Shown: positions 24,655 to 56,956 of the stretch, piece by piece
Position numbering within the stretch: position 1 is the stretch's first letter
Layout of the letters: each line of letters starts with the position of its first letter
Assembly: GCA_009859145.1 (NCBI GenBank)
Contig: VRVR01000060.1
Location: 62,001 to 126,000 of the forward strand
Origin: Andalucia godoyi And28
Lineage: Eukaryota > Protista > Jakobida
Length of the DNA stretch: 64,000 nucleotides
Direction of reading: 5' to 3'
Program-made: the position numbers and the translations under genes
The notes under the pieces: model-generated
The model's database searches: none
Seen by the model: only the letters and a program-made list of their open reading frames with translations
What the model was told of the DNA's origin: nothing

Positions 24655-27324
24655 TTACCGAACGTCCGCCGTCACATACATATTCCGCATCTCCGCGCGT
24701 TCGAACCGCGCCAGATCCACGAGCAGCGACTTTGCCTCCTCGGGGTTCAGCCGACACAGGTCGAGCACAATTGTCTGGAACTCCTGCGGAAACGCTGCGA
24801 GACGCTCTTCTGCAGACGTTGTCCAGCACTTCCCACACAACGTCTTCAGCCACTCAGGGACGTTCGAATCGGAAGGCCACGTTGGCTTGTCCCCGTCGCG
24901 GACTCGGTGCTCGGCATCGCGGTCGTCTTCTTCCTCGTAGAATGGAGTCTTCCCCGTCGCACACTCGTACAACACATGGCCGTATCCCCACAAATCATGC
25001 GACACCGATTGCTGGTACTTCATTCGCACGGTCTTGCTGCCAAAATACTCCGGCGATGCGTACCGCGACGTCGGTCGAAACTCCCCCGTCACGCCGATCG
25101 GGATCGTGTGTTTCTGATTGTACTCTGAGAAATCGGCAGTCCCGAGATCGCCAACCTTCACGATCTCCTTGCCGTTCTCATCACGACAAACGAGAAAATT
25201 GCACGCCTTGACGTCGCGATGTACAAATCCTGCAGAACGCACGGCAGACAATCCCAGCGCCACTTGCAGCGCAATGCGAAAGAGAACACTCTCTGATCGT
25301 TTGTCTTCCTCAAGAAGACGCTTGCTGAACGTCGAAAGATCGCCCAATGGACACAACTGCAGTAGCACGCCAGCGACATCATTCGTTCCGGGCTGCACCA
25401 CAAGTCCGATCGGATGCACCACATTTGGACTCGAGAGGGCGCGAAGCGCTTCGTACTCATTTCGCAGAGATTCAAACGCAGCTTGACGACGGGGTTCCAA
25501 TCCCGGAATCACAGATCCGTTCGCCTTCACAATCGGTCGGAACACCGGTTCTTTGAAAGCTGCATCGCGGCTCTCAACAACACACTGGTGTACCACTCCC
25601 TGACCTCCGTATGCAAGCATCTCGCTGACTTGCAGAGAGTCGACTGAAAACGTTTGGTCCACTGCTATCGGTTTTAGCGACTGCTTCAGTTCTTTCAAAG
25701 AAGCCTCCTGCGATTCATGGAGACTCGACAGCGAGGCCTGAATCGTTTCTGCAGATCCGCGTGTGTCCAGCTTCGAAACCGAGAACTCCAGATCAAATCG
25801 GAGGCGATCGATTGTGGACTCGAGCGACGAGATGTACGAACGAAGGGATTTGGAAAGTTCATCTGCTTCGGCAACCTTTGATTGGGCAGTTTTCTGAAGG
25901 TTAGTCAGCGCTTCTTGTTCCTTCTCCGCGAGTTGACGGAGACTCGCTTCTGCACTGCGCAACGTGCTCGCGCCTTCGCCAAAGACGCATTGAGTATCAG
26001 AGTCGGACGTGATCGCAAGCAGCGTTGATTCCGTGAATGTCTTTCCCTTGGCAACATCATTCCACACCAACTGGCCGTTCTCAATGATGAATGCTTTCCC
26101 ATTTGCTTGCTCGCCCATGATGATGGAGTCCGTGTAGAACGACATCCATTGGACGTCTGGCAAATTCAAGTTGACAGTGTTGACACACTGATCGCGCTGC
26201 CAAATGTTGAGCTCTCCGTTTTCATGAACAGTGGCAAAATGATCGGAATCGTCGGAGACTGCAAGAGCGATGGCAGGAGACGGGGAAGTTATCTTGTATT
26301 GCAGTTTCTCAGGAAGACTCCACACTTTCACCGTCTGGTCACTCGACGCCGATGCGATGCGCTTGCCGTCTGGCGAGAATGCAACGTCCCAAACACGCTC
26401 CGAATGCCCAGTCAGCGTCTGGATGCACTGGCCATCCTGCCACACTTTCACCGTCTTGTCATCAGATCCCGATACAATGCGCTTGCCGTCGGGCGAGAAC
26501 GCAACACCATAAACATAGCTTGAATGTCCACTCAGCGTCTGGATGCACTGACCATCTTGCCACACTTTCACCGTGTTGTCGTTCGATCCCGATACAATGC
26601 GCTTGCCGTCCGGCGAGAATGCGACACCAAAAACAGTGTCCGAATGACCACTCAGCGTCTGAATGCACTGACCATCTTGCCACACTTTCACCGTCGTGTC
26701 GCGCGATGCCGATGCAATGCGCTTGCCGTCCGGCGAGAATGCAACACCACAAACATAGTTCGAATGACCACTCAGGGTCTGGATGCACTGCCCATCTTGC
26801 CACACTTTCACCGTCGTGTCGCGCGATGCCGATGCAATGCGCTTGCCGTCCGGCGAGAAAGCAACACCATGCACATAGCTCGAATGTCCACTCAGCGTCT
26901 GGATGCACTGGCCATCTTCCCACACGTTCACCGTCTTGTCGTCCGATGCAGATGCAATGCGCTTGCCGTCCGGCGAGAAAGCAACACCATGCACATAGCT
27001 CAAATGTCCACTCAGCGTCTGGATGCACTGACCATCTTGCCACACTTTCACCGTGTTGTCGTACGATCCAGATGCAATGCGCTTGCCGTCGGGTGAGAAG
27101 GCAACACAACGAACATAGCTCAAATGTCCACTCAGCGTCTGGATGCACTGGAATTCTTTATCACCTTTTGCGCTGGCATAGACCACAATTTCGTTGTTCT
27201 CATTTGCCACATACCGATGAGTCGCAGTCTCCCATTCTCGGAAACTGTTCTCGACATTAAGCGTTGGAAACAGACATTTCTTCTTCAGTACCTGAAGAAC
27301 ATCAGACAATCGCTGTTCCTTCAT
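24655..27324 (-). CDS. WD40 (7 near-identical 40-aa repeats) - coiled coil - protein kinase, copy K1 (889 aa)
   Basis: Repeats QCIQTLSGHxxxVxxVAFSPDGKRIxSxSxDxTVKVWQDG; kinase motifs YGGQG, FKEP, HRDVKACN, DLG, YASPE, HDLWGYG. Confidence 0.95.
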   Translation of the reverse strand: MKEQRLSDVLQVLKKKCLFPTLNVENSFREWETATHRYVANENNEIVVYASAKGDKEFQCIQTLSGHLSYVRCVAFSPDGKRIASGSYDNTVKVWQDGQCIQTLSGHLSYVHGVAFSPDGKRIASASDDKTVNVWEDGQCIQTLSGHSSYVHGVAFSPDGKRIASASRDTTVKVWQDGQCIQTLSGHSNYVCGVAFSPDGKRIASASRDTTVKVWQDGQCIQTLSGHSDTVFGVAFSPDGKRIVSGSNDNTVKVWQDGQCIQTLSGHSSYVYGVAFSPDGKRIVSGSDDKTVKVWQDGQCIQTLTGHSERVWDVAFSPDGKRIASASSDQTVKVWSLPEKLQYKITSPSPAIALAVSDDSDHFATVHENGELNIWQRDQCVNTVNLNLPDVQWMSFYTDSIIMGEQANGKAFIIENGQLVWNDVAKGKTFTESTLLAITSDSDTQCVFGEGASTLRSAEASLRQLAEKEQEALTNLQKTAQSKVAEADELSKSLRSYISSLESTIDRLRFDLEFSVSKLDTRGSAETIQASLSSLHESQEASLKELKQSLKPIAVDQTFSVDSLQVSEMLAYGGQGVVHQCVVESRDAAFKEPVFRPIVKANGSVIPGLEPRRQAAFESLRNEYEALRALSSPNVVHPIGLVVQPGTNDVAGVLLQLCPLGDLSTFSKRLLEEDKRSESVLFRIALQVALGLSAVRSAGFVHRDVKACNFLVCRDENGKEIVKVGDLGTADFSEYNQKHTIPIGVTGEFRPTSRYASPEYFGSKTVRMKYQQSVSHDLWGYGHVLYECATGKTPFYEEEDDRDAEHRVRDGDKPTWPSDSNVPEWLKTLCGKCWTTSAEERLAAFPQEFQTIVLDLCRLNPEEAKSLLVDLARFERAEMRNMYVTADVR
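26311..27150 (-). repeat. 7 x 120-bp coding tandem repeat (WD40 array of K1)
   Basis: 120-bp periodicity visible directly in the DNA. Confidence 0.95.
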
Positions 27325-27608
27325 TGCGAAAGTGGTGAAGCGTACGATGCGGAAAAAGAAAAGAAGAAAGGATGCAGAAAATGGTGGAAAACAGAATCAC
27401 CGAGAGAAAATCCGACAGGGATTCATGTCCCATCCACATTCCGTCGTCGTTTGTCGACGACGAAAAACAGTGTGCTCGAAGATTGCTGCATCAATTGACG
27501 CGCTGCCACGAAGAGTGAATCGCTGCTGCGGATCGTCTTCCATTTTCACGAGCAGTTCGGCTTTTCTTGGATCCTGTTTGTGAAGTTTATGTTCACCGCA
27601 ACGAAAAA

Positions 27609-28515: not shown

Positions 28516-29970
28516 TTACGATGCAGCAGATTTTTGAGCAGCAACGTATTGACCAGAAGAAAGCCAATTGTCGAATAATCCACGAATAAGCGGCTTCATG
28601 TCCAACAGCACGTTCATTGCGACACAATCTATTGCGGGATACGTCTTGTATTCGGACGAGTAGCAGCGCACTACGTAAAGCGAATTCAAATTCAGTCCAG
28701 TGTGTTTGCCGATGCTCTCCCGCAACTTTGCGAGACGAGCACTGGAATAGCATTGCCAAGTGCTGGCAGCGGTCTTGAGCAAATCCTGGTCATACTTGTC
28801 AATTTTCGTTATCACAATGCAAACGTGGAGTTGGCCCTCGCAACGACGACGAGCGTAATTGGTAAGCTTCCCAATTCGCTTGCAGTAATCCACGTTTTCC
28901 GCGTCTTCTGCCGATGCGCAAACGCACATGACGTGCATCCGGTCAACTACACTGGGCGAGGAATTCATGGAAGACGCCGGAATCGGAGACTGGTCCAGAC
29001 GGGTTCCCGATTTCAGTTTCCCGTCCAAAATGAGTCCCAATTTCTCGTAGTATTCTGGATCGTCCTCGTCTTCGTATCCCATCGTATCCCACAAACGAAA
29101 TGGAAACGTTCCTTCTTCTTCCGCACCTACGTTGAAACCAACAAGCGTCTTGCTAACGGAAGTACTTTGGGACGCCATGGAAAGCTGAGACAGCACCAGT
29201 TCGTACTTTGCACAACTATCAATCGTGCTCACGAACGAGGACTTACCAGCACCGACATGTCCCACGAGCAGAATGTTGATCCGGTCGATTCCAAGCTTTG
29301 CACGTTCTCGATGCAGGAAGTGGCGCAAGGACTCCCGAAGTTCTTCACAGTGAACCTTGAGATCGATGTCCTTGTCGAGTTCCTCGTGCGCAAACGGCTC
29401 GGAAATTGTGGGTGGAGGGGCAGGAGGCGGTACGGTCACAACCGTTGCCTCAAACACGTAAACCGCATTCGGAGTGGATGACTTCAGAATTGTCCAGAAA
29501 TCACTGTTGCCATTCGAATGCTTGTAAGAGTTAGATTGGCCCGAGACGTTCCAAGAAGTATTCTGGAATATAAGCAACTCATGTCCAGCTCCAAAAGTAG
29601 GCCCGTAAGTGGCATTATCTAGAAATGCATGCTGAGAAACGGTTACAGGATAAGACAGACGATGTTCTGAACCGCTAGCATTTCGCAGGACGAACAGAAA
29701 CGCCTTTGCGTCTGGAAGCCATGCACCACTTGAACCATTTGGACCAACAGAAGTGTATCCACCAAGCATTGCACCGTTGTTTAGCTTCAACACACAGAGC
29801 TGTGCACCCTTATTGTTGCATTTCGTGTGGTAGACAGAGGAATTCAAAGAATCCTTCGGTGAAGCGTAAAGTTCTGCAAATGCAAGCGTCTCTTTCGCGC
29901 CGTTTCCGCGAATTGTTTGCGTGAGAAAGGAGATGTCCTCCTTTGAAAGAATGGGGTGTGTAGACGTCAT
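28516..29970 (-). CDS. TLDc domain plus P-loop GTPase, IFI44/IFI44L-like architecture
   Basis: TLDc: YHTKCNNKG, LGGYTS, DAKAFLF, YGPTFGAG. GTPase: INILLVGHVGAGKSSF (G1), LWDTMG (G3), ITKID (G4). Probable start MTSTHP at 29970; ORF track start 30216. Confidence 0.85.
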   Translation of the reverse strand: MTSTHPILSKEDISFLTQTIRGNGAKETLAFAELYASPKDSLNSSVYHTKCNNKGAQLCVLKLNNGAMLGGYTSVGPNGSSGAWLPDAKAFLFVLRNASGSEHRLSYPVTVSQHAFLDNATYGPTFGAGHELLIFQNTSWNVSGQSNSYKHSNGNSDFWTILKSSTPNAVYVFEATVVTVPPPAPPPTISEPFAHEELDKDIDLKVHCEELRESLRHFLHRERAKLGIDRINILLVGHVGAGKSSFVSTIDSCAKYELVLSQLSMASQSTSVSKTLVGFNVGAEEEGTFPFRLWDTMGYEDEDDPEYYEKLGLILDGKLKSGTRLDQSPIPASSMNSSPSVVDRMHVMCVCASAEDAENVDYCKRIGKLTNYARRRCEGQLHVCIVITKIDKYDQDLLKTAASTWQCYSSARLAKLRESIGKHTGLNLNSLYVVRCYSSEYKTYPAIDCVAMNVLLDMKPLIRGLFDNWLSSGQYVAAQKSAAS

Positions 29971-30296
29971 GCTGCAAGGACCGATGAATACACAACAAAT
30001 AAAGCAGAAAAAAGAAAAAGAAAGAAATAAAGGACAGAAAGAAAGGAAGAAGAATGCTTTCGCGTGGGGACAGCTCATGCGAGCCTGACAGACTCTGACC
30101 GACTGACTTCGCATTGCGTTCAATTTGTGCTTTCTGCAGCCGTTCCAGAGTCCAGACAGAATGAAGTCTGCATTGGCAGCAAAATACTCGGCAGTCTTTC
30201 CAGGACGAATTTCCATTTCCCGTCCTCGTCCCCTTTGTTTTTACTAAGTTTTGATTTTCTTCTTCTTCTTCTCCTACTTTTTCCTGGCGCATCATA

Positions 30297-43835: not shown

Positions 43836-46049
43836 ATGAGTTTCATGACTTCTGGTATGAAATCCTCGGGGATTGGAGACAAGGAATTTTGCAGTTTCAA
43901 ATCGGAACTGCAGAATCTTGCTCGAAATCCCGAATCTCCGAATCATTTGGACAGTGTTTTCCAGTGCATTCAGCAAAACCCGAGCATTGCGAAACATGTT
44001 GACAAGGAAAACCATTCGGCCCTGTTCTATGCAATAACATCTCTTCGGGGGTCTACTCGAGGAAGGGTGCGAAAGCGTGTCTTGGAATGGTTGATTGATG
44101 CGGGTGCAGAGATCGATGGTCGTGCTGTGGAAGCTGCGTTATTGAGAGACCAGATCGATACGATTGAGTATCTAGCGTACCGTGCGACCGCTCCCGGAAT
44201 TATGGAAGAGGCTGTTAAGAATGTTGAACAAAAGAGGACTCAGAAACAGCAAGTGGACCGTGGGTTCTGGGGTCCTCGGGTGCAGACGAACAGTCCTTCT
44301 AGACAGCAACAGTCGTGCGAGGTCGGGAGTGTCTCGCCTGCGGCACCTGTTTCCACTCCCCACCGAAGTGGCAATGGTGGGCCTGCCGCTCCGTCTCCTC
44401 GAACACCCGCCAGCACTTATTTATCTTCACCGCACAGTTCAGGAGGAAGCAGCTCTCCATCATCGCCTGGGACACCTTCGATTGCAAACGAGGAGCAATC
44501 CAAGAACGTTCAGGATGCCATTAAGCGAGGACAGAAACTGAAAGAGTATGAGCGGTCGGTGGAATACCAGATGCATCAGCGCCTGCAACAGCAGCTGCTT
44601 GACCAGGTGCAGAATCATCTCGAAAAGAATCTTGCGGACGTACAGGAACTCAACAAGATCAACCATCAAAGTGGCAGAGCTGCCCGCGAGATTCGGAGGG
44701 CGGCAGAAGAGTTTGTAACCAATTTCCAAACGACCGCGAGCGAAGCCGCCGCTGCATTGAATGGTCTGGCCGAAGAAGCTGGCAGTGACCTGCGGCAACA
44801 ACTCTCTGCCGACTTGCAAGAGATGCAAGCCAACCTGCTTGACACGGGGGCGGATATTCAATTGCAAGTCGAGGAAAAGGGAAATGAAATGATCCAAAAG
44901 ATGGAAAGGCTGGTGCACGATTTCGAGCAACTGAAGACGAGATCCGCAGCGACGCACGAAGGATCCTCACAGGCAGTGCCGTTTGTTTCCTTGGAACGAT
45001 TGTGCTTTCCAGGAAAGAGTATCAAGGACATGGAAAGCGGTGTTTGGACAGCTCTGGGGAAAGGCGGAAGTGGCGTCGTGTATCTGGCGCCGTGGAACAG
45101 TCCCGTGGACGGCACGAGCTGCAAGATGCAAGATCGTTTTGTGGCAATCAAGAAGTGCGCTTCGGACAAGGAAGCCAAGGCCGAATTGTCGAAAGCACAT
45201 GCCGTGATTGGCGTGCCCTCGGCTGTCAAGGTTCAAGGAATTGTGGACTGTGCGCCGTATTCCATGCTTGTCATGGAATTGATGGGCTTGTTTTCCAAGC
45301 CGACGCTGGATGCAACGCCGCGCGGCCCTATTGTCACGAATCTTTTACAGCTCAGATGCGTTTGGGAAGCGTCGTTTGGCTTGGGCTTTCCTATTCCCTG
45401 GAAGTGGAGGCTCACTTGGCTTGTTGAGATTGCTGCTGCATTGCGTGAGTTTTCCACGCACAGAATCTGCCACCGGGATGTCAAGTCCGTCAACGTACTC
45501 GTGCGAGAATGTCCGTTTTCTCACAATAACGGGTGGGTTGCAGCGTGGATCGAGAGTGTAGAAAACGGAGTCCTTCCAGCGAATTCCGACCTCGATGCAT
45601 CCATTCCGCATGACTGTCCAATCGAAGCCAAGATTGCAGATTTTGAACTGATTTTGGATCAGAAGACGCAGTATCTAGCACCCGCTTTATGCTCCGTTGG
45701 CACCAGCGAGTACATGGCTCCGGAAACGTTCCTTGACACCGAGTCAACGGACCGCGCGGACGTGTATGCGTTTTCGATGATCATGTACGAGTTGCTTCAC
45801 GGTTTCTCTGATGCGCCGTGTCCATGGCATGATGTTGGTTCAAGTCGCGATGAAAAACATCGTCTCGTCAAAGAACTGGTTCTGAAAGGACTGCGGCCAC
45901 GAATTGTCGCAACGGCGTCTGCTGGCGATGCGATTTTCGAACCGTACAAGTCGTTGATGGAACAGTGTTGGAGCCAGATCCCCGCATTCCGACCAACGTT
46001 TGGCGATGTCCACAGAGAACTTCTGTCCCTGTGTTCGAAAGCCAGTTAA
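43836..46049 (+). CDS. Ankyrin-like N-terminus, Ser/Pro linker, coiled coil, protein kinase (737 aa)
   Basis: DKENHSALFYA...WLIDAGAEID; LGKGGSGVVY, VAIKK, HRDVKSVN, IADFE, GTSEYMAPE, ADVYAFSM. Confidence 0.9.
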   Translation: MSFMTSGMKSSGIGDKEFCSFKSELQNLARNPESPNHLDSVFQCIQQNPSIAKHVDKENHSALFYAITSLRGSTRGRVRKRVLEWLIDAGAEIDGRAVEAALLRDQIDTIEYLAYRATAPGIMEEAVKNVEQKRTQKQQVDRGFWGPRVQTNSPSRQQQSCEVGSVSPAAPVSTPHRSGNGGPAAPSPRTPASTYLSSPHSSGGSSSPSSPGTPSIANEEQSKNVQDAIKRGQKLKEYERSVEYQMHQRLQQQLLDQVQNHLEKNLADVQELNKINHQSGRAAREIRRAAEEFVTNFQTTASEAAAALNGLAEEAGSDLRQQLSADLQEMQANLLDTGADIQLQVEEKGNEMIQKMERLVHDFEQLKTRSAATHEGSSQAVPFVSLERLCFPGKSIKDMESGVWTALGKGGSGVVYLAPWNSPVDGTSCKMQDRFVAIKKCASDKEAKAELSKAHAVIGVPSAVKVQGIVDCAPYSMLVMELMGLFSKPTLDATPRGPIVTNLLQLRCVWEASFGLGFPIPWKWRLTWLVEIAAALREFSTHRICHRDVKSVNVLVRECPFSHNNGWVAAWIESVENGVLPANSDLDASIPHDCPIEAKIADFELILDQKTQYLAPALCSVGTSEYMAPETFLDTESTDRADVYAFSMIMYELLHGFSDAPCPWHDVGSSRDEKHRLVKELVLKGLRPRIVATASAGDAIFEPYKSLMEQCWSQIPAFRPTFGDVHRELLSLCSKAS

Positions 46050-46929: not shown

Positions 46930-49900
46930 ATGAAAGAACAACGATTGTCTGATGTTCTCCTGGAACTGAAGAAGAAATGTTTGTTGCCAACTGTTGACAA
47001 TGTGAACGGCTTTCGGATTTGGAGGACTCAAACAAATCTATATGTGGCAAATAAGAACAACGAAATTTCGGTATATGCCAGTGGAGAACGTGAGAAGGAG
47101 CATGTATGCATTCAAACACTCGTTGGACACTCAGCAAACGTTTCTGGAGTTGTTTTTTCTCCAGATGGCAAGCGCATCGCATCGGGATCGTGGGACAAAA
47201 CGATAAATATTTGGCAAAATGGACAATGCATCCAGACGCTGAGTGGACATACAGCCTCTGTTTGGAGTGTTGCATTTTCTCCAGACGCCAAGCGCATTGC
47301 GTCAGCGTCGGGTGGTGACATGATGCAAATATCTCAAAATAGTCCGTACAATCAAGGATCTTTTGGATATTCGGGCAGTGTTGGCGGTGGTGCGCAGTCA
47401 TCAGACAATACGGTGAAAGTATGGGAAGCTGGTCAGTGCATCCAGACATTGAGTGGCCATAAGAAATGGGTTTATGGTGTTGCATTCTCTTCTGATGGAA
47501 AGCGCATCGCATCCACCTCGGCAGACAATACGGTGAAAGTGTGGGAAGCAGGTCAGTGCACCGAAACGCTGGGCGGATCTTCAGTTCAAGCCAATGAACG
47601 GTACGGACATGGGACTTATCCTCCAGGAAAACAACATATGGGTGATGTTTCGAGTGCTGTCGCGTTTTCGCCCGATGGAAAGCGTATTGCGTCGGCATCC
47701 GAAGACAATACTGTGAAAGTATGGCAGGGTGGAAAGTGCATAGAGACGCTGAGCGGACATTCAGGCAGCATTCGTAGTGTTGCATTCTCTCCCGATGGAA
47801 AGCGTATTGCGTCGGCATCCGAAGACAATACTGTGAAAGTATGGCAGGGTGGAAAGTGCATAGAGACGCTGAGCGGACATTCAGGCAGCATTCGTAGTGT
47901 TGCATTCTCTCCCGATGGCAAACGTATTGCGTCTGCATCGCATGACAATACTGTGAAAGTGTGGCAAGATGGTCAGTGTATCGAAACGCTTCTTGGGCAT
48001 TCAGGTGGAGTGAATTGTGTTGCATTCTCACCGAGCGGCAAGCGCATTGCATCCGCGTCATCCGACAAGACGGTGAAAGTGTGGGAGTCGCCATTAGACC
48101 TGCTGTATACTGTTGCAATTCCAACCTCTTGGTCTCTTCATGTACTGGGCTTTTCATCTGAACTTGATTGTTTCGCTTCTACGCACAACGATGGGATGCT
48201 CAAAATTTGGAAGAAAGACCAGCTAGTTCACACTGTTCTTTTGCCAAATGTCAGTTGGATGGCATTCCACAGTCCATCCATTCTTTTGGGTGAGCAGGAT
48301 GACGGAAAAGCATTCATTGTCGAGGATGGCCATCTGATTTGGAATGATGTCGTCCGTGACCTATTGTTCACCGAGTGCTCGTTATTCAAGATCTCAGTAC
48401 CAAAACAGTCGAATAATAACTTCTTGTTTGGCGAGGGTGCGAACTCTGTGCGACTGGCAATGGAACAGGGCAAATGCATGATTTCCGTAGAAAAATCACG
48501 AATAGAAAAATTGCAAAGTTCTGTTGAAGCAAGGCTTACAGACGCACAGACACTATCGGCATCCTTTCACGCTTACGTTTCCACACTCGAATGTGCTCTC
48601 GATCGCCTTCGCTTTGAGTTTGACTTCTCCGTGAAAAAGTTGGATTCTCGTGATCTATCCGAAATTGTCGAAACGTCGCTGACGCGCCTTCAGACAATGC
48701 AGGAATCCAGTTCGGAGGAATTGAAGAAACTCGCCCCTTTGCAAACTGCTGAAAACGTGTACTCAAGGGGGTCGATTGCAGTCGGCGACATGCTTGCGCA
48801 CGGCGGCCAAGGATTGGTACACAAGTGTCGTCTAGACGAACACGAAGTGGTTCTCAAGGAACCAGTGCTCCGGCAATTGGTCAAAACAGATGGAACGACG
48901 GTTGCTGTATCCGACTCTTATCGTTTCTCGGTAGTTAATGCGCTGCGAAATGAATACGATGCGCTGCGTGCCATCTCGAGTCCGAATGTGGTGCGTCCGA
49001 TCGGGCTCGTGGTCCAGCCGGGTACGAACGACGTCGCTGGCGTATTGCTGCAACTGTGTCCGTTGGGCGATCTTTCGACGTTTAGCAAGCGTCTGTTTGA
49101 AAAGAGCAAATTGTCAGATAGCATGCTGTTTCGCATTGCGCTGCAAGTGGCGCTTGGACTGTCTGCGGTGCGCTCGGCAGGATTTGTGCATCGCGACGTC
49201 AAAGCGTGTAATTTTCTCGTATGTCGGGATGAGCACGGCAAAGAGATCGTGAAGGTTGGCGATCTCGGAACTGCGGATTTTTCGGAGTACAATCAGAAGC
49301 ACACGATGCCGATCGGCGTGACGGGCGAGTTTCGACCGACGTCTCGGTATGCGTCACCGGAATTCGTGGGCGGCAAGGTACTTCGAGCAAAGTACCAGCA
49401 GTCGGTGTCACATGATTTGTGGGGGTACGGCCACGTCTTGTATGAATGTGCGACCGGGAAGATTCCTTTCTACGAAGAAGAAGAGGACCGTGACGCTGAG
49501 GACCGAGTCCGCGACGGAGACAACCCAACATGGCCTTCAGACCTGCCTGTGCCGGAATGGTTGAAGTCCTTGTGTGAAAAGTGCTGGACAACGTCTCCAG
49601 AAGAGCGTCTCGCAGCGTTTCCGCAGGAATTCCAGACGATTGTGCTGGATCTGTGTCGCATGAACCCGGAGGAAGCGAAATCGCTGCTCGTGGACCTTGC
49701 GCGATTCGAACGCGCGGAGATGCGGAATGTGTATGTAACTGCGAGCAATTGGGCAGAAACTGCCACCCTTGGATCAACAACAAATCATTCTCCAATTGCA
49801 GAACAAGAAGGGGAAAAGGAAGGTCTCATCTCTGGTCAAGAAGAAACCACGGTTGTGTTGCCTGCGGCAGAACAGATAGAAGCTTCTCATGATATGATCA

Positions 49901-49992
49901 ATATCGTACGCGCAAACATTGCGAACAGGAAACGAAGGATGAAGCGACTCCCTGCATCTTTTGATGCGAAAAAGAAGGTCGTGGAAGAATGA
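46930..49992 (+). CDS. WD40 - coiled coil - kinase, copy K4 (1020 aa), with 30-aa and 20-aa insertions in repeats 2 and 4
   Basis: Same architecture as K1; linker more diverged than K1/K3/K5, kinase domain close to them. Confidence 0.95.
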   Translation: MKEQRLSDVLLELKKKCLLPTVDNVNGFRIWRTQTNLYVANKNNEISVYASGEREKEHVCIQTLVGHSANVSGVVFSPDGKRIASGSWDKTINIWQNGQCIQTLSGHTASVWSVAFSPDAKRIASASGGDMMQISQNSPYNQGSFGYSGSVGGGAQSSDNTVKVWEAGQCIQTLSGHKKWVYGVAFSSDGKRIASTSADNTVKVWEAGQCTETLGGSSVQANERYGHGTYPPGKQHMGDVSSAVAFSPDGKRIASASEDNTVKVWQGGKCIETLSGHSGSIRSVAFSPDGKRIASASEDNTVKVWQGGKCIETLSGHSGSIRSVAFSPDGKRIASASHDNTVKVWQDGQCIETLLGHSGGVNCVAFSPSGKRIASASSDKTVKVWESPLDLLYTVAIPTSWSLHVLGFSSELDCFASTHNDGMLKIWKKDQLVHTVLLPNVSWMAFHSPSILLGEQDDGKAFIVEDGHLIWNDVVRDLLFTECSLFKISVPKQSNNNFLFGEGANSVRLAMEQGKCMISVEKSRIEKLQSSVEARLTDAQTLSASFHAYVSTLECALDRLRFEFDFSVKKLDSRDLSEIVETSLTRLQTMQESSSEELKKLAPLQTAENVYSRGSIAVGDMLAHGGQGLVHKCRLDEHEVVLKEPVLRQLVKTDGTTVAVSDSYRFSVVNALRNEYDALRAISSPNVVRPIGLVVQPGTNDVAGVLLQLCPLGDLSTFSKRLFEKSKLSDSMLFRIALQVALGLSAVRSAGFVHRDVKACNFLVCRDEHGKEIVKVGDLGTADFSEYNQKHTMPIGVTGEFRPTSRYASPEFVGGKVLRAKYQQSVSHDLWGYGHVLYECATGKIPFYEEEEDRDAEDRVRDGDNPTWPSDLPVPEWLKSLCEKCWTTSPEERLAAFPQEFQTIVLDLCRMNPEEAKSLLVDLARFERAEMRNVYVTASNWAETATLGSTTNHSPIAEQEGEKEGLISGQEETTVVLPAAEQIEASHDMINIVRANIANRKRRMKRLPASFDAKKKVVEE
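47104..48093 (+). repeat. WD40 coding tandem array of K4 (7 units plus two insertions)
   Basis: 990 bp = 7 x 120 + 150; a near-perfect 120-bp duplication lies around 47690-47930. Confidence 0.9.
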
Positions 49993-51062: not shown

Positions 51063-53804
51063 TTAATCCGAAGCTTGGACCATTGCGGCTTTCGCCTCCA
51101 TCATCCGCATGATGAACAATCTTAAAATCTCATGCACCGGAGGAATGTGACGAGTGTAGACAGATCGTTCATTCGCAATGTACGCAGTCGGAGAAAGATG
51201 GTCTTTGAAATCGTGAAACCGCATGCAGTACTCGGAGACCGAAAACGAGTGCAATTCGGACTTTGCTCCGGAGCTTGTTCCTACAATTTCTTCGAGTACG
51301 GATTTCCACAATCCAGAGAAGATGCCGTGCGAGCATCCAGTGTTTCCAACAGACTTCGCAACATCTGCCTCGTACTTTGCAGTGGGGCAGTTGGGCAACG
51401 CGGACGGGATGTCCCAGATCCGCTTGTTAACAAGCAATCCTTCAATATCCGCAATCCAGTAGGGCCAAACGAACATTTGATTTCCGGACCATTTGAACAA
51501 CGTTTCAATCAAATCATCGAATGCTTTCATAAACGCATTGAAGTCTCCTCCGTCCAATGATTGCTGTGCCTTTCGGTGCACGGACATGAAAGAAGAGTAG
51601 AATCTCGACGCATACCCGTTCTTCATGAACATCTGCTGACACTCGTTCAGGAACTTGGCACGAAGATGCGCGTCGGGTAACAACCTTATAGGTTTCTCTC
51701 GCAACTCCATCGACGATCCCTCCATCTGCGCATTCGTGGGGGGTGCTTCATTCATGGATAGCTCTTGCAAGATGGTGTCCAAATCCGAAAGCGGCGTTGA
51801 TCGCACATCTTTCAAGAATGAAGACAGTTGTTCCTTGCCGAAAAGCGACGCAATCGTTGGATATGCGATTGTAAATTCTTTGGTATTTTCCGACGAGAGG
51901 TGATTCAAACATCGGTATCGAATCAGCATTTCGGCCATCATCTCCTCGAAACCCATCAGCTTCTTCACCAACGACACGTGTCCGCCCTTCTTCGGGTAGC
52001 CCATCACGACTTCCGAGTCCAGTATCATGATGCACGGAATACCAAGACGATCGCAAGCTGACTTGACAAATGCCTGCGAATGACAACCGAAACAGTCGAA
52101 AATCATCCAACGCAAGCCGTGCCACGCACCAATGGAATGCGACGGGGGGAGATTGAGCTGCGCAAAGTCACTCGACGAGAAGGACTGCAAACACGAATCC
52201 AAGGCGTGAAGAATGTTGCAATCCGAACGACCCTCGACAAGGATGACACCGCGAGCAAAGAAGAATGGAAGAATCTCCACGCGGCGGCAGAAACGATAAA
52301 ACAACACGTCCTCGACCTCGAAAATGGACCGATCGCGGCAGATGGGAACGATGCTTGTCTTTGTTTCCACGCGATTCCAACTTCCACGCCCTAGCCTGCG
52401 CGCAACGGAAAACATTCTATCGGGAAGAGACACAGTGTCCAGCATCTCCACGTGGTGTGTAACGAGAAACACTTGCACATCTCGCCGTGCTCGTTCGGAA
52501 ATGAACCGGCGCAAAACACTTCGTTCAAAGGCGCCCAGATTCTGACCTGGTTCATCCAAAAGAACAATCAAAGGATGATGATTCTCCTGTGCAACAGCAT
52601 CGCTTGAGTCAGTGCGTCGAACACCAAAGAGACCAAGCACCGTCATCAAGCAATCCTTCTGGCCTCCGGAAAATTCGGATGCCGCAAAACGCAAGTGAGC
52701 TGGTTGCTGTTGCGCCGGCGAGGGTTTCGGAGAATTGGGCTGGCCCGGAGAGGACGACGATTTCTTCTTTTGAGATGGTGAAGTAGTCGCAGCAGCCTGT
52801 GCAAACGAAACTGGACGTTTTTCCTGCGGCGCAATGGAAGGCGACTGCGGTGCATTCGCAACGACAACGGGTTTCACCTTCAAGTCGGACGGATCGCAGC
52901 GAGCAAACGACTTTCCGTCAATTGGATTGAGAACACGAATGTAAGGAGCATTCGCAGATGGCCCGGGAACGGAAGCGGAACGGGCGTAGGAAAGATGAGA
53001 AACATGTTCAAGAACTTCGAATGCTTCGACTGCGACATCAATCGCATCCGCTTTGCTTAGCGATTCCCACGTCACCAACCAGGGATGTCTGTCTCGCAAA
53101 CACATATTCGGAAAATCCACTTCGCACGGATTCTTCGATTCCGAAACACAAATTCGTGGTCGGATGTAACACGGATCGCTGCGTCCATGATCTTGAGGAA
53201 CGTACGAGAAAGAACGGCAAACGGCTGCCACAAGCGCAGACAAAGTTTCTTTTTGCTCCTTTTCATTCTGTTTCAGCGGAAGCCATTCCCGTGGAACCGA
53301 AAAAGATACAACCCACGGAGCGCCTTGGGAGGCTTCGCGGAGGACGTGGAGAATCAACGATCCCGTTTTTCCATCGGCCGTTGTTGCAGAAAACGTCAAT
53401 CCGAGCTCCACACGTCGCGCATCTATGTGTTCCTTGTCCGATGCAAAGTTGATCAGTTTTTCATTCTCTTCGTCCGACAAGGCAAACGACGCTTTCAAAC
53501 CGAATCGACCATGCGCTTTGTCTTTCACGGTTGTCACGCACTCGCTGGAATCGACGGCGGTCAACAATGCTGCATGCGTGGACCAAAGAAACTGAAGTCC
53601 AACATCGATGACGCGAAGCACGGACGTCTTGCCTTCTCCCGAAGGACCAACAAAACAGTTCACATTCGGAGACCGCACGAGAGATTCCGCACTCTGGAAC
53701 GATGTTGTGACAGCACCGACACCGAAAGAAAGCAAGTTCTTGATGTGGAGGCCTGTCAAATGGAGACCACTCAGTTGGAGGGTGCGAACTTGATCTAAGG
53801 ACAT
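51063..53804 (-). CDS. OLD-family-like ATP-dependent nuclease (ABC-type ATPase plus TOPRIM)
   Basis: GLHIKNLLSF, NCFVGPSGEGKT (Walker A), FSGGQ (signature), IVLLDEPGQNL (Walker B/D-loop), VFLVTHH (H-loop), FFARGVILVEGRSD and LGIPCIMILDSE (TOPRIM). Probable start MSLDQ at 53804; ORF track start 53909. Confidence 0.85.
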   Translation of the reverse strand: MSLDQVRTLQLSGLHLTGLHIKNLLSFGVGAVTTSFQSAESLVRSPNVNCFVGPSGEGKTSVLRVIDVGLQFLWSTHAALLTAVDSSECVTTVKDKAHGRFGLKASFALSDEENEKLINFASDKEHIDARRVELGLTFSATTADGKTGSLILHVLREASQGAPWVVSFSVPREWLPLKQNEKEQKETLSALVAAVCRSFSYVPQDHGRSDPCYIRPRICVSESKNPCEVDFPNMCLRDRHPWLVTWESLSKADAIDVAVEAFEVLEHVSHLSYARSASVPGPSANAPYIRVLNPIDGKSFARCDPSDLKVKPVVVANAPQSPSIAPQEKRPVSFAQAAATTSPSQKKKSSSSPGQPNSPKPSPAQQQPAHLRFAASEFSGGQKDCLMTVLGLFGVRRTDSSDAVAQENHHPLIVLLDEPGQNLGAFERSVLRRFISERARRDVQVFLVTHHVEMLDTVSLPDRMFSVARRLGRGSWNRVETKTSIVPICRDRSIFEVEDVLFYRFCRRVEILPFFFARGVILVEGRSDCNILHALDSCLQSFSSSDFAQLNLPPSHSIGAWHGLRWMIFDCFGCHSQAFVKSACDRLGIPCIMILDSEVVMGYPKKGGHVSLVKKLMGFEEMMAEMLIRYRCLNHLSSENTKEFTIAYPTIASLFGKEQLSSFLKDVRSTPLSDLDTILQELSMNEAPPTNAQMEGSSMELREKPIRLLPDAHLRAKFLNECQQMFMKNGYASRFYSSFMSVHRKAQQSLDGGDFNAFMKAFDDLIETLFKWSGNQMFVWPYWIADIEGLLVNKRIWDIPSALPNCPTAKYEADVAKSVGNTGCSHGIFSGLWKSVLEEIVGTSSGAKSELHSFSVSEYCMRFHDFKDHLSPTAYIANERSVYTRHIPPVHEILRLFIMRMMEAKAAMVQASD

Positions 53805-54015
53805 TGTTGGTGATCGAAGTCCGTGCTCAGTACTGTGTTGCGCAGTGTTTGACTCGACGAACCATTCGGCGCAATATACGTGACTGCTGACGGAAAGAAA
53901 GAGTGTCAAGGAAAGCCATTTGAGGCAATGCGAATTCGTATTCGGAGGCTGACTTCTGCAGCGTCAGAAACTGACAGAAAGCAGTCCCATCGGATGTTGC
54001 CCTCATTTTGGTTTT

Positions 54016-54030: not shown

Positions 54031-54085
54031 CTGCATCCTGTCTTTCATTGTTTTCTGAAAGATCATACCCTCCACCACTTTCGCA

Positions 54086-56956
54086 ATGAAGGAACAGCGA
54101 TTGTCTGATGTTCTTCAGGCACTGAAGAAGAAATGTCTGTTTCCAACTGTTGGCAATGTCAACGGCAGCCAAGAATGGGAGAGTGCGACTCATCGGTATG
54201 TCGCAAATGAGAACAACGAACTTTTTGTGTTCCGTGGACTTGATAGCGATTTCGAGTGCATCCAGGCATTGAGTGGACATTCGGATGCTGTTCAGAGTGT
54301 CGCATTCTCTCCCGACGGCAAGCGCATTGCATCGGGATCGTACGACAACACGGTGAAAGTGTGGCAAGATGGCCAGTGCATCCAGACGCTGAGTGGACAT
54401 TCGAGCTATGTTAATGGTGTTGCATTCTCGCCGGACGGAAAGCGCATTGCATCGGCATCGAGTGACAGCACGGTGAAAGTGTGGGAAGATGGCCAGTGCA
54501 TCCAGACGCTGAGTGGACATTCGAGCTATGTTAATGGTGTTGCATTCTCGCCGGACGGCAAGCGCATTGCATCTGCATCGGACGACAACACGGTGAAAGT
54601 GTGGCAAGATGGCCAGTGCATCCAGACGCTGAGTGGACATTCGGACTCTGTTAATGGTGTTGCATTCTCGCCGGATGACAAGCGCATTGCATCTGCATCG
54701 GACGACTGCACGGTGAAAGTGTGGCAAGATGGCCAGTGCATCCAGACGCTGAGTGGACATTCGGACTCTGTTAATCGTGTTGCATTCTCGCCGGACGGAA
54801 AGCGCATTGCATCGGCATCTGATGACAAGACGGTGAAAGTGTGGCAAAATGGTCAGTGCATTCAGACGCTGAGTGGTCATTCGGACACTGTTTTTGGTGT
54901 CGCATTCTCGCCGGACGGCAAGCGCATTGTATCGGGATCTGATGACAAGACGGTGAAAGTGTGGCAGGATGGCCAGTGCATCAAGACGCTGACTGGGCAT
55001 TCGGAGCGTGTTTGGGACGTTGCATTCTCGCCAGACGGCAAGCGCATCGCATCGGCGTCGAGTGACCAGACGGTGAAATTATGGCAAGACGGCAAGTGCA
55101 TCCAGACGCTGAGTGGACATACAGCCGCCGTTATTGGTGTTGCATTCTCGCCCGATGGCAAGCGTATTGCATCGGGATCGATTGACAACACGGTGAAAGT
55201 GTGGAGTCTTCCTGAGAAACTGCAATACAAGATAACTTCCCCGTCTCCTGCCATCGCTCTTGCAGTCTCCGACGATTCCGATCATTTTGCCACTGTTCAT
55301 GAAAACGGAGAGCTCAACATTTGGCAGCGCGATCAGTGTGTCAACACTGTCAACTTGAATTTGCCAGACGTCCAATGGATGTCGTTCTACACGGACTCCA
55401 TCATCATGGGCGAGCAAGCAAATGGGAAAGCATTCATCATTGAGAACGGCCAGTTGGTGTGGAATGATGTTGCCAAGGGAAAGACATTCACGGAATCAAC
55501 GCTGCTTGCGATCAAGTCCGACTCTGATACTCAATGCGTCTTTGGCGAAGGCGCGAGCTCAGTGCGTGATGTTGAAACAACCTTCCGGCAACTCGTAAAG
55601 AAGGAGCAAGAAGCGCTGACTAACCTTCAGAAAACTGCCCAATCAAAGGTTGCCGAAGCAGAAGCAAACGTTCATCGATTAGCGGAGAACGAACGAGAAA
55701 CTCTTGCGAACCTGGAAAAGACTGTCCAATCAAAAGTGGCCGAAGCAGAGGCGCTTTCCAAATCGCTTCGTTCGTACATCTCGTCGCTCGAGTCCACAAT
55801 CGATCGCCTCCGATTTGATCTGGAGTTCTCGGTTTCGAAGCTGGACACACGCGGATCTGCAGAAACGATTCAGGCCTCGCTGTCGAGTCTCCATGAATCG
55901 CAGGAGGCTTCTTTGAAAGAACTGAAGCAGTCGCTAAAACCGATAGCAGTGGACCAAACGTTTTCAGTCGACTCTCTGCAAGTCAGCGAGATGCTTGCAT
56001 ACGGAGGTCAGGGAGTGGTACACCAGTGTGTTGTTGAGAGCCGCGATGCAGCTTTCAAAGAACCGGTGTTCCGACCGATTGTGAAGGCGAACGGATCTGT
56101 GATTCCGGGATTGGAACCCCGTCGTCAAGCTGCGTTTGAATCTCTGCGAAATGAGTACGAAGCGCTTCGCGCCCTCTCGAGTCCAAATGTGGTGCATCCG
56201 ATCGGACTTGTGGTGCAGCCCGGAACGAATGATGTCGCTGGCGTGCTACTGCAGTTGTGTCCATTGGGCGATCTTTCGACGTTCAGCAAGCGTCTTCTTG
56301 AGGAAGACAAACGATCAGAGAGTGTTCTCTTTCGCATTGCGCTGCAAGTGGCGCTGGGATTGTCTGCCGTGCGTTCTGCAGGATTTGTACATCGCGACGT
56401 CAAGGCGTGCAATTTTCTCGTTTGTCGTGATGAGAACGGCAAGGAGATCGTGAAGGTTGGCGATCTCGGGACTGCCGATTTCTCAGAGTACAATCAGAAA
56501 CACACGATCCCGATCGGCGTGACGGGGGAGTTTCGACCGACGTCGCGGTACGCATCGCCGGAGTATTTTGGCAGCAAGACCGTGCGAATGAAGTACCAGC
56601 AATCGGTGTCGCATGATTTGTGGGGATACGGCCATGTGTTGTACGAGTGTGCGACGGGGAAGACTCCATTCTACGAGGAAGAAGACGACCGCGATGCCGA
56701 GCACCGAGTCCGCGACGGGGACAAGCCAACGTGGCCTTCCGATTCGAACGTCCCTGAGTGGCTGAAGACGTTGTGTGGGAAGTGCTGGACAACGTCTGCA
56801 GAAGAGCGTCTCGCAGCGTTTCCGCAGGAGTTCCAGACAATTGTGCTCGACCTGTGTCGGCTGAACCCCGAGGAGGCAAAGTCGCTGCTCGTGGATCTGG
56901 CGCGGTTCGAACGCGCGGAGATGCGGAATATGTATGTGACGGCGGACGTTCGGTAA
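54086..56956 (+). CDS. WD40 (8 repeats) - coiled coil (extra 29 aa) - kinase, copy K5 (956 aa)
   Basis: Kinase half lies in the IR arm and translates identically to K1; WD array and N-terminus differ. Confidence 0.95.
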   Translation: MKEQRLSDVLQALKKKCLFPTVGNVNGSQEWESATHRYVANENNELFVFRGLDSDFECIQALSGHSDAVQSVAFSPDGKRIASGSYDNTVKVWQDGQCIQTLSGHSSYVNGVAFSPDGKRIASASSDSTVKVWEDGQCIQTLSGHSSYVNGVAFSPDGKRIASASDDNTVKVWQDGQCIQTLSGHSDSVNGVAFSPDDKRIASASDDCTVKVWQDGQCIQTLSGHSDSVNRVAFSPDGKRIASASDDKTVKVWQNGQCIQTLSGHSDTVFGVAFSPDGKRIVSGSDDKTVKVWQDGQCIKTLTGHSERVWDVAFSPDGKRIASASSDQTVKLWQDGKCIQTLSGHTAAVIGVAFSPDGKRIASGSIDNTVKVWSLPEKLQYKITSPSPAIALAVSDDSDHFATVHENGELNIWQRDQCVNTVNLNLPDVQWMSFYTDSIIMGEQANGKAFIIENGQLVWNDVAKGKTFTESTLLAIKSDSDTQCVFGEGASSVRDVETTFRQLVKKEQEALTNLQKTAQSKVAEAEANVHRLAENERETLANLEKTVQSKVAEAEALSKSLRSYISSLESTIDRLRFDLEFSVSKLDTRGSAETIQASLSSLHESQEASLKELKQSLKPIAVDQTFSVDSLQVSEMLAYGGQGVVHQCVVESRDAAFKEPVFRPIVKANGSVIPGLEPRRQAAFESLRNEYEALRALSSPNVVHPIGLVVQPGTNDVAGVLLQLCPLGDLSTFSKRLLEEDKRSESVLFRIALQVALGLSAVRSAGFVHRDVKACNFLVCRDENGKEIVKVGDLGTADFSEYNQKHTIPIGVTGEFRPTSRYASPEYFGSKTVRMKYQQSVSHDLWGYGHVLYECATGKTPFYEEEDDRDAEHRVRDGDKPTWPSDSNVPEWLKTLCGKCWTTSAEERLAAFPQEFQTIVLDLCRLNPEEAKSLLVDLARFERAEMRNMYVTADVR
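54254..55213 (+). repeat. 8 x 120-bp coding tandem repeat (WD40 array of K5)
   Basis: 120-bp periodicity visible directly in the DNA. Confidence 0.95.

What the first reader, a model, noticed from the sequence alone, without database searches (positions are those of the whole stretch)
24655..56956. Family of WD40-coiled coil-kinase proteins with near-identical repeats that vary only at surface positions
Seen: across K1, K3, K4 and K5 the 40-aa unit is almost invariant except positions 10-12, 14-15, 30 and 32 (for example SSYVNG, SDTVFG, SERVWD, SNSVQS; SYD, SDD, SRD, SLD), and repeat number differs (7, 7, 7, 8). Known: fungal HNWD/HET-E NLRs have highly conserved WD40 repeats under concerted evolution with diversifying selection at equivalent top-face positions, defining non-self recognition. 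Inference: a variable sensor wired directly to a kinase through a coiled coil with no NACHT/NB-ARC switch, that is, an NLR-independent diversifying immune receptor class.
Basis: partly seen in the sequence, partly recalled or inferred. Interest (0 to 1): 0.86.

Follow-up and report, generated by a model that had tools for sequence, protein, structure and literature searches.

The report
Hypervariable WD40-repeat kinase gene family
A free-living protist (Andalucia godoyi) carries a clustered family of kinases whose WD40 repeats stay constant except at the four binding-face positions that fungal HET-E self/non-self receptors diversify, so they look like receptor kinases under diversifying selection, with function untested.

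Summary
Five WD40–helical linker–kinase genes lie at 24655-56956. K1, K3, K4 and K5 carry 7, 7, 7 and 8 forty-residue units. Variation peaks at unit positions 11, 12, 14, 30 and 32, and is lower at 10 and 15.

"Near-identical" is overstated. Units are 78-82% identical in protein in K1, K3 and K5, and 68% in K4. Synonymous divergence between units is 0.3-0.4 in K1, K3 and K5, and 1.5 in K4. The constant scaffold therefore reflects purifying selection (omega about 0.15-0.3).

At the four sites equivalent to the HET-E selected sites (12, 14, 30, 32), a codon model gives omega 2.2-3.9, with omega=1 rejected. Pairwise tests are weaker (1.2-1.6). These sites fall in the d-a loop, the start of strand a and the b-c turn, which form the top face.

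No NACHT or NB-ARC domain is present, and the kinase catalytic motifs are intact. The source is Andalucia godoyi, where the genes are auto-annotated "HET-E-1". Only about three environmental relatives were found.

An immune or allorecognition role is inferred, not shown. WD40-kinase fusions already exist in bacteria (PkwA type) and in wheat (WTK8-MSP-WD40), so this is a new variant of a known kind. K1 and K5 share a 100% identical 3' half inside a perfect inverted repeat of at least 8.3 kb.

The parts
24655..27324 (-). K1, 889 aa. N-terminal degenerate blade, then 7 highly repetitive WD40 units (aa 59-338 = 26311-27150), 2 degenerate blades (aa 339-430), a helical linker (aa 455-548 = 25681-25962) and the kinase (about aa 561-860 = 24745-25644).
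   Evidence: Exact sequence present in EukProt.
30297..32903 (+). K2, 868 aa. Divergent family member with the same architecture but ordinary, diverged WD40 repeats. It is 32-37% identical to K1 in the C-terminal half.
33289..36030 (-). K3 (ANDGO_01358), 913-aa ORF. Its 7 units span aa 58-331 (35038-35859). Unit 3 (35518-35619) is a broken 34-residue unit inside a tandem duplication at a 222-nt offset, 209 nt of it exact.
   Evidence: EukProt isoforms of 913, 879 and 839 aa.
46930..49992 (+). K4, 1020-aa ORF. Its 7 older, more diverged units span 47104-48093. There is a 90-nt in-frame GT..AG insert (likely intron) at 47315-47404 and a 20-residue insert in unit 4. The exact ORF is not in EukProt.
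54086..56956 (+). K5, 956 aa. It has 8 units (54254-55213) and a 29-residue duplication in the helical linker. The 3' part from 55658 onward is identical to K1.
17611..25953 (.). Left arm of a perfect inverted repeat. It contains the K1 3' half, a serine recombinase gene (20243-21325, +) and small ORFs.
55658..64000 (.). Right arm of the inverted repeat, cut by the window end so its true length is unknown. It contains the K5 3' half and the second serine recombinase copy (60286-61368, -).

Best explanation
K1, K3, K4, K5 and the unlinked paralogue ANDGO_01348 are cytosolic receptor-like kinases of the jakobid Andalucia godoyi.

Shown:
- An array of highly repetitive WD40 blades folds into a beta-propeller.
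- The scaffold of that array is under strong purifying selection.
- The residues in the d-a loop, at the start of strand a and in the b-c turn evolve faster than synonymous sites.
- The arrays change by unit duplication, loss and exchange.

Inferred:
- The variable top face is a ligand-recognition surface under diversifying selection.
- The long helical linker holds the protein as a dimer or oligomer.
- Ligand binding, or ligand-driven clustering, switches on the intact C-terminal kinase by trans-autophosphorylation.
- The output is a non-self or biotic-interaction response (defence or allorecognition), without a NOD/STAND switch.
For: Architecture. In the six-member family alignment, the invariant residues include K591, E623, H702-R703-D704, N709, D726-L727-G728 and P758-E759.

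Hypervariability: it is concentrated at positions 11, 12, 14, 30 and 32. These equal the HET-E selected sites, which that paper places on the top face.

Structure: DSSP on the model puts positions 7-12 in a loop, 13-18 in strand a and 30-32 in the b-c turn. pLDDT is 90-97 over the array. The model superposes on 7-bladed WRAP-T propellers with TM 0.97.

Selection: omega at the hypervariable sites is 1.6-3.9 against a scaffold omega of 0.13-0.31, and the LRT rejects omega=1. A parsimony count gives 1.2-2.0. K1 against K5 in register gives pN at hypervariable sites 0.31 against pS 0.20.

Array turnover:
- Unit dS is below the paralogue dS.
- K5 unit 1 is closest to K3 unit 6 (90%), and K1 unit 5 equals K5 unit 6 at 95%.
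- K3 carries an exact 209-nt tandem repeat.
- Unit numbers are 7, 7, 7 and 8.

Clustering: five paralogues lie within 32 kb, among genes with conflict-system flavour. These are an OLD-like ATPase/TOPRIM protein, a TLDc-GTPase, an ankyrin protein with a ClpB-like AAA domain and a vWA protein.
Against: - There are no functional, expression or population data.
- Tree-free omega estimates are only 1.2-1.6 and are borderline.
- Recombination among units can inflate tree-based omega.
- Units are below the 85% identity used to define fungal high-internal-conservation repeats, and synonymous divergence is substantial. Concerted evolution is therefore slow or episodic.
- The kinase and linker were modelled at low confidence, with pLDDT below 50.
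- The neighbouring 'defence-like' genes match only weakly.
- K3 and K4 show damage (a broken unit and inserts), which could mean decay.
Confidence: 0.5

Rival explanations
1. These are ordinary lineage-specific signalling kinases. The WD40 array was re-amplified fairly recently from one blade. Loop residues are simply unconstrained, and the apparent omega>1 is an artefact of unit shuffling and gene conversion on a wrong tree. No non-self recognition is involved.
For: - Nine independent close pairs give omega 1.2, p=0.22.
- Synonymous divergence between units is large.
- Highly repetitive WD40 proteins arise continually in protists, fungi and bacteria.
- Divergent relatives with ordinary repeats exist: K2, and P0049, which sits among housekeeping-type genes on a metagenome contig.
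Against: - The LRT rejects omega=1 with three different tree constructions, including half-unit trees and trees built without the hypervariable codons.
- The fastest sites are exactly the four a-priori HET-E sites and not the other loops. The a-b loop SPDGK is invariant.
- In typical WD40 proteins, top-face residues are the conserved binding surface (established knowledge).
Confidence: 0.25
2. The family is cargo of, or is shaped by, a large mobile or palindromic element. Its role would be element-host conflict or allorecognition (addiction, exclusion, mating or fusion compatibility) rather than anti-pathogen immunity.
For: - A perfect inverted repeat of at least 8.3 kb brackets the cluster, and each arm carries a serine recombinase gene.
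- The left flank holds a weak P4-type primase C-terminal match.
- The HET-E analogy is itself an allorecognition system.
Against: - No relatives were found in IMG/VR viral contigs for either the primase-like protein or the kinase family.
- Element boundaries cannot be seen because the right arm is cut by the window end.
- ANDGO_01348 is a family member that lies outside the window.
Confidence: 0.17
3. Part of what is seen is an assembly or annotation artefact or reflects pseudogenes. The K1/K5 duplication, the K3 broken unit and the K4 inserts would be mis-assembly of repeats or decaying copies.
For: - The two arms are 100% identical.
- K3 has an exact 209-nt repeat with a scrambled junction.
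- EukProt lists 913-, 879- and 839-aa products for K3, differing by exactly the broken unit or by the duplication.
- The removed 102 nt has no GT..AG ends, whereas all verified A. godoyi introns do.
- The K4 ORF is absent from EukProt.
Against: - K1 and K5 differ by many substitutions, one whole unit and a 29-residue linker duplication in their 5' halves.
- All five ORFs are open over 868-1020 codons.
- The hypervariability signal does not depend on K3 unit 3 or K4 unit 4, which were excluded.
Confidence: 0.08

Closest known systems
Fungal HNWD/NWD NLRs (HET-E, HET-D, HET-R of Podospora anserina)
   Same: - The same WD40 repeat subtype.
- Repeats are highly similar within and between paralogues.
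- Hypervariability and dN>dS occur at the same two site pairs, which flank a conserved residue in the d-a loop and in the b-c turn.
- Repeat number varies among paralogues, and there are signs of unit exchange.
   Different: - There is no NACHT domain and no HET domain.
- The array is N-terminal and the output domain is a C-terminal kinase.
- Units are 40 residues rather than 42.
- Internal identity of 78-82% is below the 85% criterion, and synonymous divergence is substantial.
- The organism is a jakobid, not a fungus.
- Polymorphism among isolates is unknown.
Bacterial WRAP / highly repetitive WD40 proteins (Npun_R6612, PDB 2ymu) and PkwA-type Ser/Thr kinase-WD40 proteins
   Same: - The best sequence and fold matches of the array are 2ymu (1185 bits), its WRAP-T designs (65% identity, TM 0.97) and the PkwA WD40 domain (43%).
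- A kinase and WD40 repeats in one chain is common in cyanobacteria and planctomycetes.
- Disrupted blades occur in that group too.
   Different: - PkwA has the kinase at the N-terminus and the WD40 repeats at the C-terminus. Here the order is reversed, with a helical linker in between.
- WRAP proteins are STAND ATPases.
- Npun_R6612 has no synonymous differences between blades, whereas here dS is 0.3-1.5.
Plant kinase-fusion / tandem-kinase resistance proteins (wheat Lr39/Lr41 = WTK8-MSP-WD40)
   Same: An intracellular kinase fused to a WD40 domain acts in pathogen recognition without itself containing an NB-ARC domain.
   Different: - It is a tandem kinase-pseudokinase with a C-terminal MSP-WD40.
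- The effector is bound by kinase 2, not by the WD40 domain.
- The WD40 domain contacts a helper NLR that is required for signalling.
- Its WD40 repeats are not highly repetitive or hypervariable.
ROCO kinases (LRRK2, Dictyostelium Roco4)
   Same: They are large cytosolic kinases that combine repeat domains, including WD40, with a kinase. Roco4 is among the best, though weak, PDB matches of the kinase domain (E about 5e-13).
   Different: There is no Roc GTPase or COR domain. The domain order differs, and the repeats there are not hypervariable.

Membership tests
Fungal HNWD/NWD NLR family (HET-E type) | Central NACHT (STAND) NTPase domain | tested here: not met
   A Pfam scan of K1-K5 finds only WD40/beta-propeller and kinase families. 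The region between them is predicted helical.
Fungal HNWD/NWD NLR family (HET-E type) | WD40 repeats with high internal conservation (at least 85% amino-acid identity, PMC4986451) | tested here: not met
   Mean unit identity is 0.81 (K1), 0.82 (K3), 0.78 (K5), 0.68 (K4) and 0.69 (ANDGO_01348). This is close to the criterion but below it.
Fungal HNWD/NWD NLR family (HET-E type) | Positive selection at four codons in the d-a loop and b-c turn (top face) | tested here: met
   Omega is 2.2-3.9 at positions 12, 14, 30 and 32, and the LRT rejects omega=1 with p from 8e-4 to 3e-10. Placement in loops and turn comes from DSSP. Tree-free tests are weaker.
Fungal HNWD/NWD NLR family (HET-E type) | Repeat-number polymorphism among wild isolates | not testable with these tools
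   Only one genome is available. The three EukProt products of K3 (913, 879 and 839 aa) differ by whole units, but this can be explained by collapse during transcript assembly.
Fungal HNWD/NWD NLR family (HET-E type) | Concerted evolution of repeats within and between paralogues | tested here: inconclusive
   Unit dS of 0.31-0.40 in K1, K3 and K5 is below the K1-K4 paralogue dS of 1.15, and units are mosaic. However, K1-K3 unit dS (0.42) is about equal to their paralogue dS (0.44), and the K4 units are old (1.47).
Highly-Repetitive WD40 proteins (Hu et al. 2017: internal identity at least 0.7) | Internal repeat identity of at least 0.7 | tested here: met
   K1 0.81, K3 0.82 and K5 0.78 meet it. 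K4 at 0.68 and ANDGO_01348 at 0.69 fall just below.
PkwA-type bacterial Ser/Thr kinase-WD40 proteins | N-terminal kinase followed by a C-terminal WD40 propeller | tested here: not met
   Here the WD40 array is N-terminal and the kinase C-terminal. The WD40 fold is similar at 43% identity.
Plant tandem-kinase / kinase-fusion resistance proteins | Kinase-pseudokinase tandem with an integrated C-terminal domain | tested here: not met
   There is a single kinase domain per protein, with all catalytic motifs.
ROCO kinases | Roc GTPase plus COR domain | tested here: not met
   No Roc or COR hit.
Catalytically competent eukaryotic protein kinases | Beta3 Lys, alphaC Glu, HRD, catalytic Asn, DFG-type Asp and an APE-type motif | tested here: met
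   K591, E623, H702-R703-D704, N709, D726 (as DLG) and P758-E759 (as SPE) are invariant in all six aligned members. Activity itself was not tested.

The most novel reading that the evidence does not exclude
Jakobids have a NOD-less class of intracellular recognition receptors. In it, a HET-E-like, concertedly evolving WD40 array under diversifying selection is coupled through a dimerising helix directly to a kinase. The palindromic, recombinase-bearing locus that holds the paralogues would keep the signalling half identical by gene conversion while the sensor halves diversify by unit exchange. This would be an independent invention, in a deep-branching eukaryote, of the 'variable repeat sensor plus constant signalling module' logic.
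Probability: 0.3. Interest if true: 0.82.

Novelty: new variant of a known kind. Interest (0 to 1): 0.6.

Why it matters
Hypervariable, internally conserved repeat arrays are a hallmark of fungal NLRs and of bacterial STAND/WRAP proteins. There they are read as fast-evolving recognition modules.

Here the same site-specific pattern, with dN>dS, sits on a different signalling chassis: a kinase with no NOD domain. The organism is a discoban protist. If the inference holds, it suggests three things:
- The WD40 recognition cassette is portable across output domains and across eukaryotic supergroups.
- Protists outside the well-studied lineages have diversifying receptor families.
- A STAND switch is not required for this kind of sensor.

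It also gives a concrete family, with defined variable residues, for binding and kinase-activation experiments. The caveat is that function is entirely inferred and A. godoyi is not a genetic model.

Tried and rejected
- First impression of a giant virus or prokaryotic origin, based on intronless dense ORFs and a D5-like look of 10461-13712. Rejected: K3 equals ANDGO_01358 of Andalucia godoyi. The 'D5' idea rests only on a weak TIGR01613 hit (E 1.2e-4) with no Pfam hit and no IMG/VR relatives.
- Exact-protein look-ups of K1, K2, P0002 and P0003 to extend the contig and find ANDGO_01348 all came back 'not on record'.
- A word-indexed search with the K1 array returned only generic bacterial, fungal and metagenomic WD40 proteins (32-61% identity, all under 500 aa). 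It did not even return the K paralogues, so it says nothing about other A. godoyi proteins sharing the unit.
- Pattern scans for the C-terminal half in IMG/VR and in JGI metagenome contigs found nothing.
- All-pairs Nei-Gojobori dN/dS is saturated (pN 0.51 at the hypervariable sites) and gives a misleading 0.78. I replaced it with tree-based, close-pair and ML analyses.
- PADLOC hits of K1 (mad6, PD-T4-6 and others) are generic kinase-fold matches and were not used as evidence of defence function.
- The extra kinase at 43836-46049 is not a family member (24% identity).
- The 102-nt segment missing from ANDGO_01358.mRNA.3 cannot be a canonical intron because it has no GT..AG ends.
Full report
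**What is there**

The window holds five long ORFs with the same architecture:
- K1, 24655-27324(-), 889 aa
- K2, 30297-32903(+), 868 aa
- K3, 33289-36030(-), 913 aa
- K4, 46930-49992(+), 1020 aa
- K5, 54086-56956(+), 956 aa

Pfam finds 5-8 WD40 repeats in the N-terminal half of each and a protein kinase domain in the C-terminal third. Nothing resembles NACHT, NB-ARC or any other P-loop module.

**Source organism**

A search with the C-terminal half of K1 identifies the source as the jakobid Andalucia godoyi. K3 is ANDGO_01358. A further paralogue outside the window is ANDGO_01348. Both are auto-named 'Vegetative incompatibility protein HET-E-1'. The genome paper does not discuss them. It reports a compact genome of about 20 Mb with few introns, all GT..AG.

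**Checking the observation**

I analysed 27 clean units. K3 unit 3 and K4 unit 4 were left out, and the K4 unit 2 insert was removed.
- Twenty of the 40 positions are invariant.
- Entropy peaks at positions 30, 14, 12, 11 and 32, then 15. Position 10 is modest.
- Positions 1, 28 and 38-40 vary moderately.
- The seven named codons carry 103 of 168 inferred non-synonymous changes.

So the pattern is real and far from random. 'Near-identical' and 'only' are too strong, for two reasons:
- Unit identity is 78-82% in protein and 83-85% in DNA for K1, K3 and K5. It is 68% and 70% for K4.
- Synonymous divergence between units is substantial, with dS 0.31-0.40 in K1, K3 and K5, and 1.47 in K4.

The invariant scaffold is therefore maintained by purifying selection (omega 0.13-0.31), not merely by very recent amplification.

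**Irregularities in the arrays**

- K3 unit 3 is a broken 34-residue unit. It sits at the junction of a tandem duplication at a 222-nt offset, of which 209 nt are exact.
- K4 unit 2 carries a 90-nt in-frame insert at 47315-47404 with GT..AG ends. Removing it restores a perfect 40-residue unit, so it is probably an intron.
- K4 unit 4 has a 20-residue insert.

- All-pairs Nei-Gojobori is saturated and uninformative.
- A parsimony count on a neighbour-joining tree gives omega 1.2-2.0 at the variable sites against the unit-wide synonymous rate.
- Nine independent close pairs give 1.2 (p=0.22).
- K1 against K5 in register gives pN 0.31 against pS 0.20 (ratio 1.57, p=0.023).
- I wrote a fixed-partition codon likelihood model with a shared synonymous rate, kappa and a tree scale.
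  - It gives omega 1.6-2.1 for the seven sites.
  - It gives omega 2.2-2.9 for positions 12, 14, 30 and 32.
  - The LRT against omega=1 gives p from 2e-3 to 6e-7.
- The four-site set was not chosen from these data. It is the translation of the HET-E sites 7, 9, 25 and 27, which flank conserved sites 8 and 26, onto this register, where 12 and 14 flank V13 and 30 and 32 flank D31.
- The result survives separate trees for each half-unit (omega 2.6) and trees built without the variable codons (omega 3.4-3.9, p down to 3e-10).

Caveats: the tree topology and branch proportions were fixed, units are not independent, and recombination among units can inflate such tests. My reading is that excess non-synonymous change is supported but not beyond dispute.

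**Are the sites on the surface?**

An AlphaFold2 model of K1 has pLDDT 90-97 across the array. It shows 40 strands between residues 29 and 424, which makes ten blades: one degenerate N-terminal blade, seven repetitive blades and two degenerate C-terminal blades.

Per unit, the DSSP assignment is:

| Unit positions | Element |
|---|---|
| 1-6 | strand d |
| 7-12 | loop |
| 13-18 | strand a |
| 19-23 | loop |
| 24-29 | strand b |
| 30-32 | turn |
| 33-38 | strand c |

The variable sites thus sit in the d-a loop, at the start of strand a and in the b-c turn. Paoletti et al. place these elements on the top interaction face. The a-b loop (SPDGK) on the other face is invariant.

The model superposes on 7-bladed WRAP-T designer propellers (TM 0.97, rmsd 0.8 Å, 65% identity) and on the PkwA WD40 domain. 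The best sequence match in the PDB is the Nostoc highly repetitive propeller 2ymu. I could not obtain coordinates, so exposure is inferred from topology and was not computed.

**Linker and kinase**

Residues 455-548 are predicted as two long helices at low confidence. Heptad periodicity is modest (p=0.03). K5 has a 29-residue duplication there. 'Coiled coil' is plausible but not shown.

All catalytic kinase residues are invariant across six family members, including K2. The kinase is not close to any characterised group. Its best PDB matches are FAK, TBK1, Roco4 and NEK7, at E about 1e-13.

**Evolution of the family**

C-terminal-half dS values are K1-K5 0.03, K1-K3 0.44 and K1-K4 1.15. K2 is saturated.

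Units within K1, K3 and K5 (dS 0.31-0.40) are much younger than the K1-K4 split, although K4 has the same 7-unit array. The arrays of the K1/K3/K5 clade were therefore homogenised or re-amplified after that split. The K4 units are old, apart from one recent pair (units 5 and 6, 92%).

Units are mosaic across genes:
- K5 unit 1 is closest to K3 unit 6.
- K1 unit 5 matches K5 unit 6 at 95%.
- K1 unit 7 matches K5 unit 7.

K1 and K5 are themselves a mosaic. They are 100% identical over aa 1-20, 281-440 and 492-889. They diverge over aa 21-80, by 5-13% through units 2-6, and over aa 441-490.

The identical 3' part belongs to a perfect inverted repeat, 17611-25953 against 55658-64000. It is cut by the window end, so its full extent is unknown.

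**Distribution**

A profile search of 1.84 billion representative proteins with the C-terminal half finds:
- one further full-length relative, P0049 (979 aa, with ordinary repeats), on a 41-kb gene-dense metagenome contig whose called neighbours include BLTP1/Csf1-type, ubiquitin-domain and Ofd1-type 2OG-oxygenase genes;
- two fragments, one of which is 55% identical to K1.

There are no relatives in IMG/VR or in a JGI metagenome pattern scan. The architecture thus predates the highly repetitive subfamily, and the subfamily is so far confined to Andalucia.

**Comparison with what is known**

The site pattern, the repeat subtype and the array dynamics are those of the fungal HNWD family. The defining NACHT domain is absent, and internal identity is just under the 85% criterion. 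It works like HET-E at the sensor end but is not a member of that family.

It meets the definition of 'Highly-Repetitive WD40' (at least 0.7 internal identity).

WD40-kinase fusions are known:
- They are frequent in cyanobacteria and planctomycetes, and PkwA has the opposite domain order.
- Wheat Lr39/Lr41 is a tandem kinase with MSP-WD40 that needs a helper NLR, and its WD40 domain is not the sensor.
- A kinase domain is listed among the N-terminal domains of fungal NLRs.

The idea of 'a repeat sensor wired to a kinase without a NOD' therefore has precedents. What I did not find described in the libraries I searched is the combination of three things: a HET-E-type hypervariable array, a single C-terminal kinase and a discoban host.

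**Verdict**

- The structural and evolutionary parts of the interpretation are supported.
- The immune function and the claim of a new class are unproven.
- Novelty: a new variant of a known kind. Interest: 0.6.

Noticed in passing
window 17611-25953 and 55658-64000: A perfect (100%) inverted repeat of at least 8343 nt brackets a 29.7-kb unique segment. The right arm is cut by the window end, so the repeat may be longer. Its inner boundary lies inside K1 and K5.
   Followed up: partly
window 20243-21325 (+) and 60286-61368 (-): Each repeat arm encodes a 360-aa serine recombinase (Pfam Resolvase, E 3.6e-32). It is 26-30% identical to phage serine integrases. This is unusual for a eukaryotic nuclear genome and hints at a mobile or invertible element.
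   Followed up: partly
window 51063-53909 (-): A 948-aa protein with an ABC/SMC-type ATPase and an OLD-like TOPRIM domain. It has weak matches to the defence-system proteins AriA, GajA and PtuA. OLD-family nucleases are typically prokaryotic defence genes.
   Followed up: partly
window 28516-30216 (-): A 566-aa protein that combines a TLDc domain with a P-loop GTPase-like region. It lies between K1 and K2.
   Followed up: no
window 39822-41819 (+): A 665-aa protein with ankyrin repeats and a ClpB/ClpV-like AAA domain. Its best PADLOC match is DolB (E 1.9e-16).
   Followed up: no
window 36933-38663 (+): A 576-aa protein with a C-terminal vWA domain, a long helical region and a short MDA tandem repeat (MDAMDAMDAMDAMDDDDDDE).
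   Followed up: no
window 43836-46049 (+): A sixth kinase gene (737 aa) in the cluster, without WD40 repeats. It is only 24% identical to the K-family kinase and has DFE in place of DFG.
   Followed up: partly
window 33289-36030 (K3), units at 35038-35859: EukProt holds three products for ANDGO_01358: 913, 879 and 839 aa. They differ by exactly the broken unit (34 aa) or by the 222-nt tandem duplication (74 aa). The 102-nt gap has no GT..AG ends. This could be real array heterogeneity or collapse of repeats during transcript assembly.
   Followed up: partly
window 47315-47404 (K4): A 90-nt in-frame insert with GT..AG ends lies inside a WD40 unit. Removing it restores a perfect 40-residue unit, so it is probably an intron that happens to be translatable.
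   Followed up: partly
window 7442-10144 (-), 10461-13712 (-), 15381-17456 (-): Three large ORFs (900, 1083 and 691 aa) left of the repeat have almost no family matches. The only hit is a weak P4-type primase C-terminal match in the 1083-aa protein (E 1.2e-4). The 691-aa protein has repeated Cys-rich 'CYH..SC' motifs. No IMG/VR relatives were found for the 1083-aa protein.
   Followed up: partly
L001 8144-11083 (JGI metagenome 3300042934 contig, 41 kb): An environmental full-length relative, P0049, with diverged WD40 repeats. It sits among eukaryotic housekeeping-type genes (BLTP1/Csf1, an Ofd1-like oxygenase, a ubiquitin-domain protein) on a gene-dense contig, presumably from an uncultured relative.
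   Followed up: partly
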